Shown here: in pieces, positions 10,701-36,762 of the stretch
Position numbering within the stretch: position 1 is the stretch's first letter
Layout of the letters: each line of letters starts with the position of its first letter
Assembly (NCBI RefSeq): GCF_963676685.1
Contig: NC_092345.1
Coordinates: 30,070,001-30,134,000 of the forward strand
Reading direction: 5' to 3'
DNA length: 64,000 nt
Origin: Mytilus edulis
Lineage: Eukaryota
Program-made: the position numbers and the translations under genes
Notes under the pieces: generated by a model
What the model was told of the DNA's origin: nothing
Seen by the model: only the letters and a program-made list of their open reading frames with translations
Database searches by the model: none

Positions 10701-13700
10701 ATTACAGATTGTCATCGGGATAAACGATCAACACAAAAACAAGGAATTCATGTATACACATGGAAAAAAGTATTGCAACACCAAATTGAAATTGAAATTA
10801 AAAAAACACTTTTCATTTTTTTGGGATATAATTTGGTAAAATAGAACTAGTTAAACATTATTTAAGTATCACCTGAGTTTAATAAAAAAAATATCGACTC
10901 GATAATTTTTTATCTGCACATGCAGCTACTCTACCCGTAAACAGCAAAACAGTTGTTTTTATCCTCATTGTTTTCAACCCTTTAAATAACCAAATTTTTA
11001 AAGTTATGTAATTGACATCTTATAATGGGTCCTGGACAACTCTTAACTGCAGCAAGATGGCAGATTATCAGCATAAGGGAAGCAGGGATGTCGCTGTAAA
11101 AACTGCACGTTTTGTTGGTCATCACCATTTCTCTATAAGTCGTTTTGAGAATAAATCAGGCAATAAATGCTGTAAAAGACATTCCGAGATAATGAAGACC
11201 CCCTATACCATTTGCTAAGAAAAATCAAGCATAATGAAGGTTGGTCAGAAGGAAACCCATTGCATACAAGACAATCATAAAAAGAGAGTGGTGGCCATAC
11301 AGGAGCCTTTTAACAAGAACTGTTCGAGATCGACTCATCGCTACTGGTTATCGTGCGATAAGACCATTTCGGAGACCTTTGCTAACGAACAGACACACAG
11401 TTTTCCGTATCCAATGTTGTGCAGAGTTCGCCAAAGTTGGAAATTAGCATCGTGGAGGAAGATCCAATGTTCAAATGGAATTCGGTTCATCTTCCTTGGC
11501 ACGATCGTAGCCCGGATTTCAACCATATCGAGCATATTTGGGACACTATTGGGCGGAAAGTGCGCGAAAGGACACCCCAGTTCAAACCAATCATGAAATA
11601 AACAATGCCCGTCATCAGAAATGGTTGCTGCTACCTTAGCAACAAATTAGTCGATTTATGGCAGGAATCAGAAGACGTTTAGATGCGGTTATCCGTTTGG
11701 ATAGAGGCTGCGCACAAAGTACTAATTCTTTGGCGTATAACCATCAACCATGATGTGAACAGTCATCTAAGGATTAATTTTGAAATGTCTGACATTGTAA
11801 TGTTCGACTACAGTAGAAGTTGTAAAATGCATTTTTTTGTACAAAAAACACTCCATTTTGGTATTAAAATTGTGGTTATATAAATCATTTTTTTTTTCAA
11901 ACATTTTTTGTTCGTGCCAATGTTATCATAAACTATGTTTCAATAATATTATACACATATTTTATTATATTTCATCCAAAAAAAGAGGCTGATTTTTCAA
12001 GTTTTAAAAAATCAAGGTGTTGCAATACTTTTTTCCATGTGTATATAATAATTGACAGGATAGAACAATGATTATTTTTTTTTATTGTCCTAGATCATTT
12101 TCGTAGATTACAATTATCACTTTTCGTTTATTCAGGAAAATTTGTGGATATATTTTCTAGAGAGTTTGGATAATGACTGTTCAAGAAAATAGAAAAGTTA
12201 TATTTCAGTAAATATTTAATTTCATGGTTTACCTACACCCATGACATCTATGAAATGAGTACCATACGAAGATTTAATGTATCCACAGTATTTTGAGATG
12301 ACGAAATGTATATTGTTGATATACAATACTAAAAATATTCATATTAAAGCAACTATTGTGTAAATAAATTCATCATAGATACCAGGACTAAATTTTGTAT
12401 ATACGCCAGACGCGCGTTTCGTCTACAAAAGACTCATCAGTGACGCTCGAATCCAAAAAAGTTAAAAAAGCCAAATAAAGTACGAAGTTGAAGAGAATTG
12501 AGTACCAAAATTCCTAAAGTTTTATAACGGTACTTTAAAGTTAACCGGATGCTACTGGAGTTCTAATATATTTATCATATCAAACCTCTAGGGAGACGTT
12601 TTGCTTCCACCAAAAGAAGAAATGTGGAAAGATATACATGAAAACATTGAAGCAATGAGAAAGAGATACATTGCTGGAACGCGTCATACAATCCAAGTTG
12701 AATGGCTAGAATATATGGATGGATTAGCAACTCTTATTAAATGCATACCAGACCTATGTAAGTATTAATAAAGTGATTCATTCTCTTCGTCTTTCAATCT
12801 CACTCTTTCCAACTCATCCATTTCAACTTTTCATCGCCCCTCATTCACACACTCTTTTAATCTCACTTTTCTACTCTCGCTCTCTCTTCTACCCTTGCTC
12901 TTTGTCCTTTTCTCCTCTCACTCTTTCCCCCATTCTTCTCTATCTTAATATGACTCCATCGCTCGCTTCCTCTCTCTGTCTCCATCTCACACTCACTCAC
13001 TGCTCACTCTTTCCCCTCTCTCACTACTAACTCTGTCTCTGTCCCTCTCCCTCGCACTCCTCACTATGTCCCTCTCTTTCACTATCGCACTACCCTCTCT
13101 GTCCCACTCTCTCTCACTCTCACTGCTCATTCTGTCTCTCTTTCTCACTCGCACTCTCACTCTCACCCTCACTCGCACCCTCTTCCTCTCTCTCCCTTTC
13201 AATTACTCTCAATGCTCACTCTGTCCCTCTCGTTGCTCTCTCTGTCCCGCTGCACTCTCTCTGATGTGCTACTTTCTGTCGCTGTGTCTCTCTCTTTCTC
13301 TGTCCTCTCTTACTCTCACTTTCTCGCTGCTCTCTCTGTAAGGGTAAGAGCAGAAAGGTTAGAGAGAGAAAGACAGAGTAAGTGATAGAGGGAGAGTAAA
13401 AAAAAGAATGTGATAAGATAGAAAAAATTAAAGATAGCGAAAAATGAGAGAGAATAGGAAATGAGTGTGAGATATAAAGAAAGAGAGAGAGAGGGGGATT
13501 AGAACGACATATAAGGAGAAACAACTAGAGTCTAAGAATAAGACCTAGAGAGAAAGAAAAACAAACGAGCGAGAAAGAGAAAAGGTGATTTTTAGAGTAA
13601 AATCACTTGTAAAAGATCCTTTCCAAGTTAAAATCTTTAAGGCTGCATTAGCAAGAAAGAAATTACACTCGTGGTATAGTGCATGGCTACGGCAGCATAG

Positions 13701-15893
13701 CGTTCTTTTCCGTCAGGGCTGAACAATTAAGCAGTCCATCGGGGAGTGCACCATTGCCTACCAGTATCATGGAAAGGACGGCGCTCTAACCTTCAGTTGT
13801 CCTTCATTAGGTTTGAGCACAATACTGTATATGTTGAAGTAAAGGTCTTATCTCAACAGAAATAATGTACAGATGTGGTATTTAAGTTTTTGACGTTTTG
13901 TGTTTTAACTTTTAAATAAGGAAGTCATTGTCATTTTGCTTTCATTTGAGTATTGTAGTTGATCATTCTTCAGAACTATTCATTCTGCTTTCATTAAAAA
14001 AGTTTAAATCTTTGAATATTCAGAAATGTTTTAAATGAACATATTCAGGGGTGGTAACTTGACAAATTGTATATGTATATATGTGTACCTCAAATAAAAC
14101 AAACCATGTGTTAACCGATCTATCAACGTGTAATATTAGAGAAGTACTAGTACCAGAAAATAGACAGCTTTCGTTTAACTTCTAGATTTTTTTAACCTAT
14201 TTATTAATGAATTTGTTGACCGTTATTGAATATTCGTTTACAGATGATATCAGATACGTTCCTTATGTCGTTAATACAATCCCGTTCTCTTTTCACGACT
14301 ATGACCTACCCAATTATACTATTTACCATGTTTGTAATAACTCTAGCAACAGGACGGGTGCTAACCTTTAGGGAGCTCATGAGATCATGCACAAATTTTG
14401 ATGGGGTTCGTGTTGCTTAGTCTTTAGTTTTCTCTGTTGTGTCTTGTGTACTATTATTTGTCTGTCTGTTGTCGAATGACCCTATGGTATCTACCTATCT
14501 ACCTTCGAAAATATAGTTTACAATGTGACTATCTCTAAATGAATCAACTTAGTTAAAATATCAATTATATGGTCATTTTTATAAATTTCCTGTTTACAAA
14601 AGTATGAATTTTTCGAAAAACTAAGGATTTTCTTATCCCAGGCATAGATTACCTTAGCCGTATTTGGTACAACTTTTTTGTAATTTTGGGTCCTTAATGC
14701 TCTTCATTTTTGTACTTGTTAAGCTTTAAAACTATTTTTATCTGATCGTCAATGATCAGTCTTATGTAGACAAAACGCGCGTCTGACGCATCTGGCGTAC
14801 GGTGACCTGTAGTTGTTAACTTCTGTGTCATTTTGGTCTCTTATGGAGATTTGTCTCATTGGCAATCAAACCACATCTTATTTTTGATACATTATAAGCC
14901 TGGTACCTTTGATAACTAATTACGTACGCCATTACAATCGAGTATGTTATGGAATATTATTTATTAAAGAATTGAAAGGTTCTTTTTGTAAATTTATTGG
15001 GGTGTAAAAGCGTTGACCGAAGTACATTTCGTATTCCGCGCTTCATTCTAAACATGTTCGCACGGTGTCAACGCTTTTGAACCGTATGAAATAACACAAA
15101 GAAGCATTCGATATTTAAAATTACCTTTTTTAGCTAGGATCATGAAAACACCTTTTTTTATCAAGTACATTTCGTATTACGCGCTTCATTCTAAACATGT
15201 TCGCACGGTCAACGCTTTTAAACCGTATCAAATAACAAAAAGAAGCATTCGATACTTAAAATTACTTTTTTTAGCTAGGATCATGAAAACACCATTTCTA
15301 TCAAGTTTGACGTTAATATCCTGTTGACTTTATTGTTGGACCTCGTGTCATAATGACTGTTACATTTCATTGTGTAATGAATGTTAATTTCAGAAGGACG
15401 GGAGATTACTGTTATCCAATCAAAATTACGTATCATAATGAAACATACATTTGATATGATTATAATATATTAGGAAAAACAAAACTATGATACTGAATGT
15501 TTACTTTACATGCTATAGTAAATACAAGAAATCGTGAAGCTGCCAAAAATAAGACATTTTCAAGAAATAAACGTAAATCAATGTATATATATCGTAAGCT
15601 TTCAAAATTTTTAATCGTTTATTTTAGGGAATATGTTGAAAACAGATCCAAAATTGGCATTGACATGTTACTTTGGACCAAGTACTCCATATCAATATCG
15701 ACTTGAAGGTCCAGGAAAATGGAGTGGTGCTCGTGAGGCTATCTTTACACAGTGGGATCGAACACTTTCGTCGTTGAAATCAAGACCTGTAGACTTTGAA
15801 GAGAATACCACTGGATTTTCAAAATTCAATGTCTTTTGCATCGCAGTCGTGGCTATTATTGTTTATTACTTTATTGCATACTATAAAATATGA
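7732..15893 (+). CDS. FMO: Flavin-containing monooxygenase (FMO5-like), 6 coding exons, ~535 aa
   Basis: Exons 7732-7837, 8027-8241, 9137-9436, 9991-10545, 12592-12757 and 15628-15893 with GT-AG boundaries and consistent phases (1608 nt). Motifs: GAGASG (FAD), [15 protein letters not shown] (FMO fingerprint), GIGNSG (NADPH), FATGY, hydrophobic C-terminal anchor. Confidence 0.95.
8325..8410 (+). repeat. Fragment of a DINE-1/HINE-like element with a (GTCC)n tract
   Basis: 'tttatgtcccac..ggtctgtgcgtccgttcgtccgtccgtccgtctg'; layout typical of non-autonomous Helentron ends. Confidence 0.4.
10757..12041 (+). mobile_element. Decayed, internally deleted Tc1/mariner transposon in FMO intron 4
   Basis: Perfect 26-bp TIRs cacatggaaaaaagtattgcaacacc (10757-10782 / 12016-12041) flanked by TA. 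Frameshifted transposase remnants [24 protein letters not shown] and [18 protein letters not shown] (Tc1 WPxxSPDLNPIE motif). Confidence 0.92.
12362..12525 (-). mobile_element. Partial retrozyme-like repeat, antisense to FMO
   Basis: Nearly identical to 34522-34690 and contains a hammerhead core. Confidence 0.75.
12402..12450 (-). ncRNA. Type I hammerhead ribozyme core
   Basis: Minus strand reads CUGAUGA-GUCU(UUUGU)AGAC-GAAA-CGC(GCGUCUG)GCG-UA: all core nucleotides, stems II and III and a GUA cleavage triplet. Stem I is weak. Confidence 0.75.
12790..13585. repeat. Degenerate (CT)n polypyrimidine tract switching to a (GA)n polypurine tract
   Basis: CT-rich 12790-13338, GA-rich 13340-13585, in FMO intron 5. 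Confidence 0.9.
14230..14470 (+). mobile_element. Degenerate 3' fragment of the Penelope-like element
   Basis: Translates ..[10 protein letters not shown].., matching the C-terminus QMISDMFLTS of ORF 23604-24170, followed by the same 3' region ('ggggttcgtgttgct..tagtttt'). Confidence 0.7.
14560..14918 (+). mobile_element. Retrozyme-like repeat (second subfamily) with a mutated hammerhead, interrupted by a SINE-like piece
   Basis: 14751-14799 'aatgatcagtcttatgtagacaaaacgcgcgtctg..gcgta' (CUGAUGA and GAAA mutated); upstream sequence is homologous to the reverse complement of 34690-34800. Confidence 0.65.
14981..15475. mobile_element. Hairpin-type non-autonomous element with an internal ~140-bp duplication
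   Basis: Inverted arms 'aaaagcgttgaccg' / 'cggtgtcaacgctttt'; ~15020-15163 is repeated at ~15164-15305. Confidence 0.55.
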
Positions 15894-31500: not shown

Positions 31501-34500
31501 GTCAATTTTAATTTGGTTCCTTGGGGTGATCTTCATAAATTAATTATGATCTAGATAATGAGTTGTTCAAGACAGAACAGTGACAAATGACTACTTTGAA
31601 TTCAGTGAACAATTCTTGCATTCTAAAAAGCTGTAAAATTTCCATTATAGCAGCATCGGATTTCATTTGAATAGCTGAACGTTCCTGTTGAAGCTAGTTT
31701 GTACAACGAAATATTTCGTGAATCTACGTAGAATATATTTTCATTATCACTTATAAGCGTGTTAAAGTTACGTTCTTGGGCTTTTAAACATATATATTGC
31801 ATATTATTGGGAAATTTTATATCTTTTAGAATATTTTCTTTAACAGAAGTGACAATAATGAGGGTCTTTTCAGAAAATCCTTCCAAAACAATTACTAGTA
31901 GTATATTTCATGTCATACATCATTACATGCATGAATAACCTAGTTTCTCATTTTTAACAAAGTCTTATCAAACTGCATCATTTTGCAGCCATTAGCAATG
32001 CATGTGTCTGCATGCAACCATCTTCGTTCTCTTCAATAATGATCGACTGACTATTTGACATATGACCTAAACCTTGGCGATTGGGCTAGCTTAATGGATG
32101 AGGACAAGTCTGTTCTTAATCATAACAGAGGAACTTATTCTATGCTTGTCTTAACTTCAATAGCTGACTGGCGGTATGGGCTTTGCTCACTATTGAAGAC
32201 GGTACAGTGACCTATAATTGTTAATTTTTGTGTCATTTGGTCTCTTGTGAAGAGTCGTATCATTGGCACTCATGCCTCATCTTCTTTTTTTATATTTAGT
32301 ATAGTACTTAGTCTAGCGATGTGAGTAGTCTTGTTATAATTACCTTTGCTCAGCTGTGGATTATTATAATGTACCTCTAGCAGCACAAATCTAGACCAAC
32401 CATCTCCGCCTACTGGCGTTCCAGCTTCCTCTGGTAATGTTACTGACTGTAATATATTATTAAAGTCACAAGTTAAGGGTGCTGAACAAATATTGCTTTT
32501 CTGATACCCAGATGCAAGGAATTATACAATTCAAATGTGCAAATACCTGAATATTTTTATGAGAAAACGAATTAAAGGATTTTACTAGGTGTAAAGAGTA
32601 TGTTTGTATGACGCATATGGAAAAAAAGATGAATTTAAATTATATAAGACAAGTGAAGTTCTTTGATTTGGCATATTTAGCTATTTATATTGGATCGTCA
32701 TGATGGTTTTTGTCTTACCTAGTTCTTATTATCTAATTAAATATATTGAGTAATTAGGGATTCAATGTAAATTACTTTTCTAATATTTTAAGCGAGTCCA
32801 AAATATGCAACACAGCCTGCATTTAGGTTGATAGAATGTGAAAATGAGGGGAACATAGCATAAAGAGTGAACAGGTCGGAAGTGAAAAAGATTAAGAAAA
32901 AAAACCCAGTAATTTCAAAATTATCAAACTGAATCGGATAATAAGACACTTAAGACACATTTCACTTCCATCTTATTGTATAAAACTATTCTTTCGCTTC
33001 GTCAATTTGAATAGGTTCGTTAAATTATTGTTAGTTTAAATCTTTATAGCCATGGATATTTTTTTATTTTGGAATTGATCGCGACCTTTGTGTACTACTA
33101 TCATACTTACTGATGCACCCATTGCCCATGCGCCAATGACTTTACGACAGATTGACAGCCCTGGTGGTTTTCCCTCCGCTAAGCCAGGACCATTATAGGA
33201 TGGAACAACTTCATCTGGTCTGGCTTCACAATGAAATAGTTCCATATGGTGAACAAGATGTTCGTGGCCTTTCTCGATGATTCCTTCATACTACGAGAAC
33301 ACATAGGAAAAATATTTCTATATAATATTATAAAGTCTTGTAATATTTTCACAACTGATAATGATTTCAGATGATCAAATCATGGATACGGAGTTGCATC
33401 TTAGTTACTACATAAAAACTTTTAGAATAAATAGCCGTACATTGTAATGTGCGTGTTATTTCTTCATTTCAGTAAAAAAAAAAGTCTATTTTAACTGAAC
33501 TAGTAAACATTTTTGTTTTGAGGCCAGCTAAAGCCCGACTCCGGTGTGGGATTTTCTCGTTGTGTTGAACACCCATTGGTGACATAAGGCTGTTTTCTGC
33601 ACATTGTTCGGGTTGTTGTCTTTTTGACACAATCTTAATTTCCATTCTCAATTTTATTTTTAAATACAAAATATAAGAAGGTAAGAAGAAACATTTTTGT
33701 TTTCTTGTTATAATTTAAATATACTTCATATTTGTTTTCTTATTCTAATGTTACCTTGATGATATGATGTTTCCGTTTGAAATCTGGTAACTTAGTTAGA
33801 TACCACCAGTAAGTGGTATCAGTTGATGGAACTGTTATCTGTAAAAAAAAATATTGAGACAGGAACTTGACCATTTTTACACATTTGTAACTACCTGGTA
33901 TTTTAAAATTTTAAATTATTTAAGTCCGTCGTTTTTCAGAAATTTTCGTATACCATTTACATGCCTAGATTGATTTCTGTTTCATCAACATTTTTATCAA
34001 TTCTGAAAATTGTCATTAAGAAAGAATTTCTGCAGATTAAGTAGTCAAACTGTTAAAAATTGAAAAAAAAAGCCGGAGCCTTTGTTAGTCTTGTATTATT
34101 TTAATTTTAGTTTCTTGTGTACAATTTGGAAATTAGTATGGCGTTCATTATCACTGGACTAGTATATATAAGTTTAGGGGCCAGCTGAGGGACGCCTCCG
34201 GGTGCGGGAATTTCTCGCTACATTGAAGACCTGTTGGTGACCCTCTGCTGTTGTTTTTTATTTGGTCGGGTTGTTGTCTCTTTGACACATTCCCCATTTC
34301 CATTCTCAATTTTATAATCTATACAATTCTATACATTATAATTCTAGAATTTTTATTTGATACTTTCCAAGGAAATAAAACAGTTCCAATTATTAGATAC
34401 CAAAATGTGTAAGTGCTATTTTAAAAAGTTGCAAAAGAAAATTGAGATTTGGCTTAACTGAACAGTTTGTTGAACTTGATTACGGCAGACCATTGAGTTT

Positions 34501-36762
34501 TGGCGTTACCAGGAAAGTCGGAAATAAACTCATCATAGGTACATGTACCAGGACTAAATTTTATATATATACGCCAGACGCGCGTTTCGTCTACAAAAGA
34601 CTCATCAGTGACGCTCGAATCCAGAAAAGTTTTTAAAAAAAAGTCTAATAAAGTACGACGTTGAGGAGCATTGAGGTCCAAAATTCCTAAAAGTGTTGCC
34701 AAATACATCTAAGGTAATCTATGCCTGAGGTAGAAAAGCCTTAGTATTTCAAAAAAATCCAAATTTTGTAAACAGTTAATTTATAAATATAACAATATCA
34801 ATGATAATTCGTGTCAGCACAAAAAGTGTTGACTACTGGGCTTGTGATACCCTCGGGGAAATAAATCTTCGCCAGTAGTGGCATCGACTCAGTGGTTGTA
34901 AATAAACTCATCATAGATACCAGGACTAAATTTTATATATATTCGCCTACATTGCAAACTTTAATCTTATTTATTAGCTTCATACCTCTTGGTTCGTGAC
35001 GTCAATGACTGTTGTGTCTTTTGGTATGTTCACATCTGGAATATCTGGTTTCAAAATTTGAACTCTCTGTAGGCCTTTCTTATATTGTAAAGTGTTGATA
35101 TGTCTGGGATATTCGTAGCCAGTGAAAAATATTATGTGTGTCGTTCCATTCTGTTGAAACATACAAATTGTTAATCAGATTTTCGAATATTTGAATACAT
35201 TCTATTTTTTATGTGATGAAACTAAATGAGAATTAAATTATATGTTAAATATAGAATTGTAGAACCGGAACATTGATGACTTATTAAAGTGAATCGTGAG
35301 CATTTGTATTTGTTCTTGTTATTCAAGACTGAACAAGGTGATACAAGGTGATACTGCGAATTGTACAACAGTTGAAATAAGTCGAAAGACACGTTTCTTT
35401 ACATGTATTGCGGAATAATAACGACGGTACACCGGATGACGGTCAATTATACAAAATCGCAATCTGTCAAAGAGTCTCAGAGGAGTTACATTAAACAGTG
35501 TCATTCTTGCACTATAGTGAAATAATGATCATATCATAATGACAGTCTTATCTGGTCATTTATTGTATATATGAACAAACAATCATAGCAAGTACGAGAA
35601 CTTTCTGATAAAGAGTGTCAAAAGAGTTTCGTTCAAAAAGTGACAAGCTTTCTCTCAAACGGTCTCTGGAGTATTGATGTGTTTCGCGGGACGGACGTAC
35701 GAACAGAGACCATCACCACCACCCAACATATTCCAACCCCACCCTTGAGGCGTGAGCAAGGTTTTCAAAAATTTTTCAAAATAAAAATGTATAAGAAAAC
35801 AGCTGCACTAGACTTAAACTAGTTTCTATCGCTTATCATTGTTTTCATATGTTTTACCACAGAGTGGGAATAATTTGTATATCGAACGTTCGTGAGATAA
35901 CCCGCGTTTTATTTTAACTCTTCCACTACCCATTAAACTTACGTCTAGTTTGTAATCGTCCTCGTCACATGTATCAAACTTTCTTATGAATTCTAGCGTA
36001 AACCTGTTATATTTCAACTTTTCAGTAAGTGTCCGCACGTAGTTTTGGTTTTGGTCAATGTGTATATATCCTCTATTGTTTGTATGGACGTCCTAAATTG
36101 AAAAGGCATTAATAAAAATAAAGATTTTTTTTTACAAAATTAACTAAAAATACTATTTTGATTTATAAGTGAATGAATGGAGTACAAGTTGACCATCAAG
36201 ACTCACTACTTACAGTTTTGTATTAAACAATCATACAATTTTCACACGATTCTTTAATTTTAATTGGCCGAGACAGTCCAATAGTATATTTAATTTCCGT
36301 GTAAAATTCAACATCTACTAATGACTGTACGTGTACGTGACAAAGTCAAAACAATGTTTAAAAAACAAGAGAAAGCCTTAGTTTATGTAACTCTTAATTT
36401 AATGGTTGTTGCATATATTCTTTTCCATCTGACTTTCAATTCATCAATCGTTTGTGAATAAATTATTCATACTATCTAAAGGATGAACTTACTTTGAACA
36501 TTTTATTACCAAATAAGTCCTTCCAAAACAAAACTAAATCAGCATTTTCACATTCACCATAATCAGAAAACCCGAACGCTAACCATTCGTTTGGTCGCAG
36601 TTTTCCTTGTATCCGAAATTTCACTAGTTCGTCGGCATAATTCACATTCCATTGTAGGTTGAGCGATTTGTCCTTACTAAGAATTGTTTCATATTTAAAA
36701 TGTTCGGCAAAAGTTATTATATAAAAGGAAAATACAGAACACACAAATGCAATAGAATTCAT
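25507..36762 (-). CDS. DBH: Dopamine/tyramine beta-hydroxylase (DOMON + copper type II monooxygenase domains), 12 coding exons, ~570 aa
   Basis: Exons 36493-36762, 35943-36092, 34986-35150, 33755-33838, 33111-33290, 32344-32446, 30799-30965, 30290-30472, 29691-29750, 28137-28264, 27452-27605 and 25507-25575 (1713 nt, phases consistent). Signal peptide, DOMON (WLAFGFS..ADLV), CuH ligands LVHHM and EVHYNNP, CuM ligands QLHTH and EEMC. Confidence 0.95.
25630..26115 (+). mobile_element. Degenerate retrozyme-related repeat of a different family, with a hammerhead-like remnant
   Basis: ~26045-26092 'ttgagcgttccagatgaagattaatccagaaatgcgcttcggacgca'; related remnant near 50713-50750. Confidence 0.4.
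27230..27355 (-). repeat. Abundant SINE-like repeat ('aagaagatgtggtatgattgccaatgagacaac' family)
   Basis: Further copies at ~14800-14885, 32170-32295, 41730-41900, 50440-50550, 51630-51700, 52445-52650, 53560-53670, 59155-59230 and 62755-62990. Confidence 0.8.
27731..28093 (-). mobile_element. Degenerate full-length retrozyme-like monomer in a DBH intron
   Basis: Colinear with 34522-34947; CUGAUGA and GAAA are retained but stems II and III are eroded. Confidence 0.65.
34522..34947 (-). mobile_element. Full-length retrozyme-like element: ~378-nt monomer plus ~45-nt terminal redundancy
   Basis: Direct repeat 'aaataaactcatcatag..accaggactaaattttatatatat..cgcc' at 34522 and 34900; non-coding; carries an intact hammerhead core. 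Confidence 0.8.
34570..34618 (-). ncRNA. Type I hammerhead ribozyme core in sense orientation in DBH intron 3
   Basis: Same core sequence as 12402-12450. Confidence 0.75.

What the first reader, a model, noticed from the sequence alone, without database searches (positions are those of the whole stretch)
34522..34947. Complete retrozyme-like unit with an intact hammerhead ribozyme, in sense orientation in a DBH intron
Seen: a non-coding ~378-nt monomer with ~45 nt of terminal redundancy. Its minus strand has a full hammerhead core (CUGAUGA, stem II, GAAA, stem III, GUA) about 400 nt downstream of the DBH exon 3 donor, on the transcribed strand. The minus-strand copy starts almost at the cleavage-site sequence and runs slightly more than one unit. 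Known: tandem type I hammerhead retrozymes that give small circular RNAs are described in metazoans, including mussels. Inference: this is a reverse-transcribed circle that could cut the DBH pre-mRNA co-transcriptionally. Stem I is weak, and the palindrome ACGCGCGU in stem/loop III suggests conditional or dimer-dependent cleavage.
Basis: partly seen in the sequence, partly recalled or inferred. Interest (0 to 1): 0.8.

Follow-up and report, generated by a model that had tools for sequence, protein, structure and literature searches.

The report
Ordinary mussel hammerhead retrozyme copy
This is one of several thousand copies of an already described mussel "retrozyme", a small mobile repeat carrying a self-cutting hammerhead RNA; it lies in an intron of a dopamine-beta-hydroxylase-like gene, and nothing suggests it does anything special there.

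Summary
Window 34522-34948 (minus strand) is a non-coding copy 1.13 units long of a 372-nt repeat. It has one intact type I hammerhead at 34614-34571 (Rfam RF00163, 32.5 bits, gathering score 34, E 4e-6). The copy lies in sense, 37 nt into intron 3 of a DBH-like gene.

This is the known Mytilus non-LTR retrozyme (Cervera & de la Pena 2020, PMC7229834). By eye, its hammerhead matches letter for letter that of their cloned, self-cleaving Mg353 repeat. The exact 32-nt core occurs 3,596 times in this genome.

Across 65 copies, almost all share one 3' end about 50 nt past the cut site, and their 5' starts are scattered. The start at the cut site is therefore probably chance. With a single hammerhead, this locus cannot release a unit-length RNA or a circle.

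RNA-seq shows the family expressed, but no reads on the host exons or the unique intron, so an effect on the pre-mRNA is untested and probably negligible.

This scan has met the family before on other DNA of this genome (s1-838849 reached the same verdict). A lead from earlier notes held up: a 70-nt block of the unit is homologous to the 5' UTR of an intact Naiad-type Penelope-like element.

The parts
34522..34948 (-). Retrozyme insertion, 427 bp, 1.13 units. Its 5' end is at unit position 1-2 and its 3' end at unit position 49 (...GAGTTTATTT).
   Evidence: 34.7% GC; longest ATG ORF in a unit dimer is 63 aa
34577..34948 (-). One full 372-nt unit, written from cut site to cut site.
   Evidence: on average 93.4% identical to 38 other units of the genome
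34571..34614 (-). Type I hammerhead ribozyme. Stem I: 34614-34609 with 34576-34571. CUGAUGA: 34608-34602. Stem II: 34601-34598 with 34592-34589. GAAA: 34588-34585. Helix III palindrome ACGCGCGU: 34585-34578. Cleavage triplet GUC: 34579-34577.
   Evidence: RF00163, 32.5 bits, E 4.2e-6, model 1-45; by eye, identical to the hammerhead of the cloned M. galloprovincialis repeat Mg353
34576..34577 (-). Predicted self-cleavage site, between C34577 and U34576 of the minus-strand RNA.
   Evidence: Rfam alignment; the cut site is marked at the same place in the Mg353 sequence in the supplement
34522..34576 (-). Terminal redundancy: a second copy of unit positions 1-49 with a 6-nt CATGTA insertion. It ends at the family's fixed 3' terminus.
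34833..34902 (-). Block (unit positions about 47-116) homologous to the 5' UTR of a Naiad-type Penelope-like element. It contains the helix ACUACUGG/CCAGUAGU around a CCCCGAGGG hairpin.
   Evidence: nhmmer 16.5 bits, E 5.6e-4; best of 450 shuffles 3.1 bits
34986..35150 (-). Exon 3 of the host DBH-like monooxygenase gene; donor GT at 34985-34984.
33740..33874 (-). ORF that contains the next exon (start of the Cu2_monooxygen domain; the exon begins near 33841). Intron 3 is about 1.15 kb.

Best explanation
Window 34522-34948(-) is a 5'-truncated insertion, 1.13 units long, of the known Mytilus non-LTR hammerhead retrozyme. It lies in sense in intron 3 of a DBH-like monooxygenase gene.

Shown: the repeat anatomy; the intact type I hammerhead; its identity by eye to the published, experimentally self-cleaving mussel hammerhead; the copy number; and the family-wide pattern of one fixed 3' end (unit position about 49-52) with scattered 5' starts.

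Inferred: reverse transcription started at that fixed point on a retrozyme RNA longer than one unit (a multimer or a circle), ran 427 nt and stopped. The enzyme was most likely that of a Penelope-like element, with a Naiad-type element as the best candidate. The stop next to the cut site is probably coincidence.

The copy has one hammerhead, so a transcript of this locus cannot release a unit-length RNA or a circle. At most, the slow ribozyme (about 0.1 per min in vitro for the same sequence) nicks some intron RNA. It is probably helped by pairing with a second hammerhead RNA. Any consequence for the host mRNA is likely negligible.
For: - Hammerhead: RF00163, full-length match, E 4.2e-6; 3 sites, none in shuffles.
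- Same family as the published one: unit of 372 nt within the published 350-390 bp, about 5000 copies, and a hammerhead that by eye is letter-identical to Mg353, which self-cleaved at about 0.1 per min.
- Copy number in this genome: 4,924 candidates; 3,153 exact copies of the 3' tail 27-mer; 3,596 exact copies of the 32-nt core.
- Fixed 3' end and scattered 5' starts: 25 elements plus an unbiased sample of 40 loci.
- Single hammerhead in this copy.
- Helix III energetics.
- Family RNA, including reads that cross the unit boundary ('goes back about 370').
- Naiad link.
- Host gene.
Against: - The Rfam score is 1.5 bits below the gathering score.
- No target-site duplications were detectable.
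- No similarity was found between the retrozyme 3' end and the 3' ends of the Naiad or of five other Penelope-like elements. The helper enzyme and the priming signal are therefore not established.
- The 5' end lies within 1-2 nt of the cut site, so run-off of the reverse transcriptase on a template already self-cleaved there cannot be excluded for this copy.
- No RNA from this locus was seen, so neither cleavage nor its absence in vivo is shown.
Confidence: 0.88

Rival explanations
1. One reading: the copy is cDNA of a circular retrozyme RNA. Reverse transcription started near unit position 50, went once round the circle, and ended where the circle had been opened by the hammerhead.
For: The copy is longer than one unit, and its 5' end lies within 1-2 nt of the cut site. 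Circles are the main RNA form of this family (PMC7229834). Some two- or three-unit arrays have 99.4-100% identical units, as a rolling-circle copy would (L011, L029).
Against: A circle opened at the cut site could not have been crossed by the enzyme the first time, about 50 nt after the start. The two copies of the redundant 49 nt differ at 2-3 positions plus a 6-nt indel. Starts at the cut site are not enriched in the family: 0 of about 40 in the unbiased sample and 3 of 65 overall, against 1.4 expected. Mean identity within arrays (95.6%) barely exceeds identity between loci (94.9%).
Confidence: 0.3
2. The hammerhead has been co-opted. It cuts the DBH-like pre-mRNA co-transcriptionally and so tunes or gates expression, possibly only when it pairs with a second hammerhead RNA in trans.
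For: It is in sense orientation, 408 nt into intron 3, with an intact core that by eye matches an active ribozyme. Helix III favours dimers. Retrozyme RNA is abundant.
Against: It is one of 3,596 identical cores. The copy is slightly more diverged than average (93.4% against 94.9%), with no sign of special conservation. The published rate of about 0.1 per min is slow. My own estimate, not tested here, is that this is slow compared with typical intron removal. By my recollection of mammalian work, also not checked here, cleavage inside an intron need not stop splicing. No host transcripts were available to test this.
Confidence: 0.04
3. The copy is the remnant of a longer tandem array that lost its upstream units by deletion after insertion.
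For: Arrays of up to 7.3 units exist. Deletions in repeats are common.
Against: The family shows the graded 5' truncation typical of incomplete reverse transcription, down to 35-nt tails. The 5' boundary is sharp and lies 37 nt from an intact splice donor.
Confidence: 0.06

Closest known systems
Mytilus galloprovincialis non-LTR retrozyme (Cervera & de la Pena 2020, NAR 48:5054, PMC7229834); cloned genomic repeat Mg353
   Same: Same hammerhead by eye (GAGCGTCACTGATGAGTCTTTTGTAGACGAAACGCGCGTC|TGGCGTAT). Same unit size class (372 nt against 350-390 bp), low GC, non-coding, about 5000 copies per genome, same flanking unit sequence.
   Different: This copy has a single hammerhead and is 5'-truncated, so it is not a ribozyme-flanked unit. 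The paper does not describe the fixed 3' terminus or the 5' truncation ('truncat' occurs 0 times). The 2020 review says no conserved motif points to the helper element.
Newt/salamander satellite 2 and Schistosoma Sm-alpha type I hammerheads (the Rfam RF00163 consensus)
   Same: Same CUGAUGA...GAAAC GCGC GUC core and the same short palindromic helix III. According to PMC7229834 and PMC7761336, that helix makes amphibian hammerheads act as dimers.
   Different: Different repeat family and host. The single-hammerhead mussel construct did self-cleave in vitro, though slowly.
Non-autonomous derivatives of Penelope-like elements (Craig et al. 2021, PMC8557442)
   Same: High degree of 5' truncation, one fixed 3' end, multicopy head-to-tail insertions, no clear target-site duplications. 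A 70-nt block is shared with a Naiad 5' UTR.
   Different: The published non-autonomous Chlamys elements resemble their partners at the 3' end; no 3' similarity was found here. Naiads are reported to lack canonical hammerheads. No (TA)n target bias was noticed by eye in the flanks printed; it was not measured.
Conserved intronic hammerheads of amniotes (HH9/HH10)
   Same: A hammerhead lying in sense in an intron of a protein-coding gene.
   Different: Those are single-copy, deeply conserved motifs. This is a recent copy of a repeat present thousands of times. Only RF00163 was listed from the hammerhead clan (one lower-scoring overlapping match of the same clan was left out).

Membership tests
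Hammerhead ribozyme, type I (Rfam RF00163) | Conserved catalytic core (CUGAUGA ... GAAA ... UH cleavage triplet) in a three-helix junction with helix I open | tested here: met
   full-length alignment 1-45/45, every conserved core letter present, E 4.2e-6. Helices I (6 bp) and II (4 bp) are formed; helix III is the consensus ACGCGCGU.
Hammerhead ribozyme, type I (Rfam RF00163) | Score at or above Rfam's curated gathering score (34 bits) | tested here: not met
   32.5 bits, 1.5 bits short. This is a curation threshold, not a structural feature. The shortfall comes from stem I letters that differ from the consensus.
Hammerhead ribozyme, type I (Rfam RF00163) | Self-cleavage in Mg2+ | not testable with these tools
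   A hammerhead that by eye has the same sequence, in the cloned Mg353 repeat, self-cleaved co-transcriptionally at about 0.1 per min (PMC7229834).
Metazoan non-LTR retrozyme (Mytilus family) | Short (150-450 bp), low-GC, non-coding repeat unit carrying a type I hammerhead, without LTR | tested here: met
   372-nt unit, 35.5% GC, longest ORF 63 aa, no repeats other than the unit redundancy.
Metazoan non-LTR retrozyme (Mytilus family) | Thousands of dispersed and tandem copies in the genome | tested here: met
   4,924 candidates; 3,596 exact cores; arrays of up to 7.3 units.
Metazoan non-LTR retrozyme (Mytilus family) | Sequence identity to the published element | tested here: met
   Compared by eye with Mg353 in the supplement: hammerhead identical, flanks clearly homologous. 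No computed alignment was made, because the supplement sequence is not a stored locus.
Metazoan non-LTR retrozyme (Mytilus family) | Unit flanked by two hammerheads, so that a monomer can be released and circularised | tested here: not met
   This copy has one hammerhead. The feature holds for other copies of the family. So this is a truncated member, not a circle-producing locus.
Metazoan non-LTR retrozyme (Mytilus family) | Expression as unit-length circular RNA | tested here: inconclusive
   Family reads at depth 100-1500 and joints crossing the unit boundary appear in 3 raw RNA runs, but these fit tandem transcripts as well as circles. There was no pile-up of read ends at the cut site. Circles were shown by northern blot and RT-PCR in PMC7229834.
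Non-autonomous Penelope-like (Naiad-dependent) element | Fixed 3' terminus, frequent 5' truncation, head-to-tail multicopy insertions | tested here: met
   nearly all of 65 copies end at unit position 45-58; starts are scattered; lengths run from 0.09 to 7.3 units.
Non-autonomous Penelope-like (Naiad-dependent) element | Sequence shared with an autonomous partner | tested here: inconclusive
   A 70-nt block is shared with the 5' UTR of an intact Naiad (1012-aa ORF with an N-terminal GIY-YIG domain and CxC, DKA and YIDD motifs): nhmmer E 5.6e-4. No similarity at the 3' ends. Only one Naiad family was examined.

The most novel reading that the evidence does not exclude
The sense-strand hammerhead in intron 3 acts on the host transcript. 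When abundant retrozyme RNA pairs with it through the palindromic helix III (a trans double hammerhead), the DBH-like pre-mRNA is cut 408 nt into the intron. Catecholamine synthesis would then be coupled to retrozyme RNA levels, and the same would apply to hundreds of other genes with sense intronic copies.
Probability: 0.04. Interest if true: 0.6.

Novelty: already known. Interest (0 to 1): 0.12.

Why it matters
As a single locus it matters little. It is one more copy of a described family, and a single slow hammerhead inside a 1.15-kb intron is unlikely to affect the host gene.

Two family-level points are of some use. First, genomic copies share one precise 3' end about 50 nt past the cut site and are 5'-truncated, the signature of target-primed reverse transcription from a defined start. 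Second, the first 70 nt after that point are homologous to the 5' UTR of an intact Naiad-type Penelope-like element. The literature read here says no motif points to the helper element, so this is a testable lead. Other reports of this scan had already noted it.

Tried and rejected
- **Target-site duplications.** The longest common word between 5' and 3' flanks of 55 elements averaged 5.42 nt, against 5.52 in shuffled pairings. No signal.
- **Excess of 5' ends at the cut site.** None of about 40 copies in the unbiased sample and 3 of 65 overall within 8 nt, against about 1.4 expected. Not significant.
- **Identity within arrays against between loci, as a test for rolling-circle copying.** 95.6% against 94.9%. 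Not decisive.
- **Thermodynamic folds.** The minimum-energy fold of the 71-nt hammerhead region is not the hammerhead fold (z = 0.11). The 372-nt unit is no more stable than shuffles (z = 0.87). This is uninformative, as is usual for hammerheads.
- **Similarity of the retrozyme to 3' regions of other elements.** Five Penelope-like elements with a C-terminal endonuclease, and the Naiad 3' UTR, gave nothing significant. A 16-nt match in L075 lies 60-90 nt inside that element's 3' end.
- **RNA evidence at the locus.** The exons and the unique intron had zero depth in three raw RNA runs and one contig set.
- **Larger genomic sample.** Only small pieces were fetched afterwards.
- **Mg353 comparison.** I did not type the published Mg353 sequence into any tool, so that comparison is by eye only.
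- **Spliced model.** The host gene was searched exon by exon only. The joined protein was not built or searched.

Full report
**What is there**

On the minus strand, window 34948-34522 carries a 372-nt unit followed by a second copy of its first 49 positions. Direct repeats lie 372 and 378 nt apart; the difference is a 6-nt CATGTA insertion in the downstream copy. The element is 34.7% GC, and the longest ORF in a unit dimer is 63 aa.

The Rfam type I hammerhead model RF00163 aligns over its whole length to 34614-34571(-) at 32.5 bits, E 4.2e-6 in the local search. That is 1.5 bits under the gathering score, which is why the whole-window gathering scan was empty. Every conserved core letter is present. 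A core pattern allowing three mismatches finds three sites in the window and none in 100 shuffles.

The alignment puts the cut after GUC, between C34577 and U34576. Stem I is 6 bp with two G.U pairs, stem II is 4 bp, and helix III is the palindrome ACGCGCGU. As a hairpin, helix III costs +0.8 kcal/mol. Between two hammerheads it forms an 8-bp duplex of -14.7 kcal/mol. It is the classical double-hammerhead situation described for amphibian repeats (PMC7229834, PMC7761336).

**Host gene**

The exons were checked one at a time; the joined model was deliberately not built or searched.
- 36472-36762(-) is a DOMON domain.
- 33740-33874(-) and 33036-33245(-) are Cu2_monooxygen.
- The 34986-35150(-) peptide aligns to human dopamine beta-hydroxylase residues 125-177 (E 2.4e-4).
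- 33036-33245(-) aligns to human DBH residues 225-269.

The donor GT is at 34985-34984. The element begins 37 nt into intron 3, the hammerhead 371 nt in, and the cut site 408 nt in. The intron is about 1.15 kb.

**What it is**

The genome is 1.37 Gb with 14 large contigs. It holds 4,924 candidate matches to the element, 3,153 exact copies of a 27-mer from its 3' tail and 3,596 exact copies of the 32-nt hammerhead core.

Cervera & de la Pena (2020, PMC7229834) described this family in Mytilus galloprovincialis:
- about 5000 type I hammerheads in repeats of 350-390 bp;
- abundant circular RNAs in all tissues tested;
- co-transcriptional self-cleavage at about 0.1 per min;
- circularisation by a tRNA-type ligase.

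Their supplement prints the cloned genomic repeat Mg353. Its hammerhead, with the cut site marked, reads the same letter for letter as the window's, and the flanks are plainly homologous (compared by eye). The construct as printed has a single hammerhead, so one hammerhead in cis is active, though slowly. The finding is therefore a copy of an already characterised element.

**How the copy arose**

I mapped 25 independent elements from the best genome matches. I also mapped an unbiased sample of 40 loci, taken in coordinate order from the 3'-tail pattern hits.
- Nearly all end at unit positions 45-58, most at 48-53 (...TATGATGAGTTTATTT[AC]).
- Their 5' starts are scattered over the unit.
- Lengths run from 0.09 to 7.3 units.

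This is the signature of reverse transcription from one defined start with frequent early termination. It matches what is described for Penelope-like elements and their non-autonomous derivatives (PMC8557442).

No target-site duplications are detectable. The window copy starts within 1-2 nt of the cut site. None of the unbiased sample does, and only 3 of 65 copies start within 8 nt of it (about 1.4 expected), so this is most simply chance. Run-off on a template already cut there cannot be excluded for this one copy.

A template longer than one unit is required, but a circle and a multimeric transcript are not distinguishable. Within arrays, units are on average only slightly more alike than units between loci (95.6% against 94.9%), although two short arrays are 99.4-100% identical. 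The two copies of the redundant 49 nt in the window differ at 2-3 positions and by the 6-nt indel.

**What it can do here**

The copy has one hammerhead. A transcript through this locus therefore cannot release a unit-length RNA, and hence no circle.

The ribozyme could nick the intron RNA. Three things argue against a real effect on the host mRNA:
- The published rate is about 0.1 per min.
- The mussel hammerhead lacks the usual loop-loop contacts.
- The intron is only 1.15 kb. My own estimate, not tested here, is that most introns of this size are removed before such a slow ribozyme acts.

The copy is slightly more diverged than average (93.4% against 94.9%) and shows no sign of special conservation. 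With 3,596 identical cores in the genome, intronic sense copies must be common. Another first-stage note of this scan describes one in a different gene's intron.

**RNA data**

Three raw RNA-seq runs and one contig set of the same species label were laid on 33700-35300 at 90% likeness.
- The host exons and the unique intron flanks had zero depth. The gene was not expressed in those samples, and nothing can be said about its pre-mRNA.
- The retrozyme stretch had depth of about 100-1500, with many variant letters. These reads come from other copies.
- Reads crossing the unit boundary ('goes back about 370') were present. They fit tandem transcripts or circles.
- There was no pile-up of read ends at the cut site. 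That is compatible with mostly circular or uncut RNA but proves nothing.

**The helper element (a lead from earlier notes, partly tested)**

Sampling GIY-YIG hits in the genome produced an intact 1012-aa ORF at G000:C5:1351366-1354404(-). It has an N-terminal GIY-YIG domain (aa 138-228) and CxC, DKA and YIDD motifs. These are the diagnostic features of Naiad-type Penelope-like elements listed in PMC8557442.

A block of its 5' UTR, ending about 10 nt before the ATG, is homologous to retrozyme unit positions about 47-116 (window 34902-34833):
- nhmmer with a profile of 39 units gives 16.5 bits, E 5.6e-4;
- the best of 450 shuffled controls scores 3.1 bits;
- the outer helix ACUGCUGG/CCAGUAGU is kept, with wobble changes.

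In the retrozyme, this block begins exactly where the genomic copies end. Full-length copies of this Naiad family start about 190 nt upstream of the block. The 3' regions of the Naiad and of five Penelope-like elements with a C-terminal endonuclease show no significant similarity to the retrozyme. A Naiad helper is thus a supported lead, not a demonstration, and what defines the reverse-transcription start remains open.

**Verdict**

Novelty: already known. This scan had already met the family on other DNA of this genome and reached the same conclusion (s1-838849).

Noticed in passing
window 12359-12518 (-): A second copy of the same retrozyme family: 160 bp, unit positions 258 to 52 (0.45 unit), with a hammerhead core identical to the one at 34577-34608 and the same fixed 3' end.
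   Followed up: partly
window 14556-14925 (+): A diverged copy (77% identity) of a second retrozyme subfamily. Its hammerhead core is dead (ATGATCA for CUGAUGA, CAAAAC for CGAAAC). It has extra sequence after the cut site and a different tail (...CCTGGTACCTTTGATAACTAATTAC). RNA reads with this subfamily's tail are abundant (loose ends at 34570).
   Followed up: partly
window 34078-34347, with a relative at about 33469-33669 (same intron): A young, roughly 240-bp dispersed repeat: at least 1,631 candidate copies, the best 98-99% identical, with one fixed end at about 34078. RNA-seq depth is 600-2000. No tRNA or Rfam match. Family not identified.
   Followed up: partly
G000:C5:1350200-1354749 (loci L078, L079, L080): An apparently intact Naiad-type Penelope-like element (1012-aa ORF), followed head-to-tail by the 5' end of a further copy. 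Its 3' UTR holds two tandem repeats of about 250 nt.
   Followed up: partly
L079, reverse-complement positions about 783-812: A 27-nt insert in one of the two Naiad 3' UTR repeats equals the 3' tail of the second retrozyme subfamily. It looks like an extremely 5'-truncated retrozyme insertion.
   Followed up: no
L075 (G000:C10:14960450-14961650) and 43 related places: A family of Penelope-like elements with a C-terminal endonuclease. The 3' ends of its copies pile up in a (TA)n stretch. About 200 nt after the stop codon there is a hammerhead-like motif with C instead of U at core position 4 (CCGAUGA...GAAA).
   Followed up: no
L056/L057 and L065/L069: Pairs of retrozyme copies with the same flanking sequence. 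They are either segmental duplicates or insertions carried inside another repeat, so they are not independent insertions.
   Followed up: no
window 15633-15893 (+): An ORF whose sequence recalls the C-terminal end of a flavin-containing monooxygenase. This is by recollection only; no search was run. It probably belongs to a neighbouring gene on the other strand.
   Followed up: no
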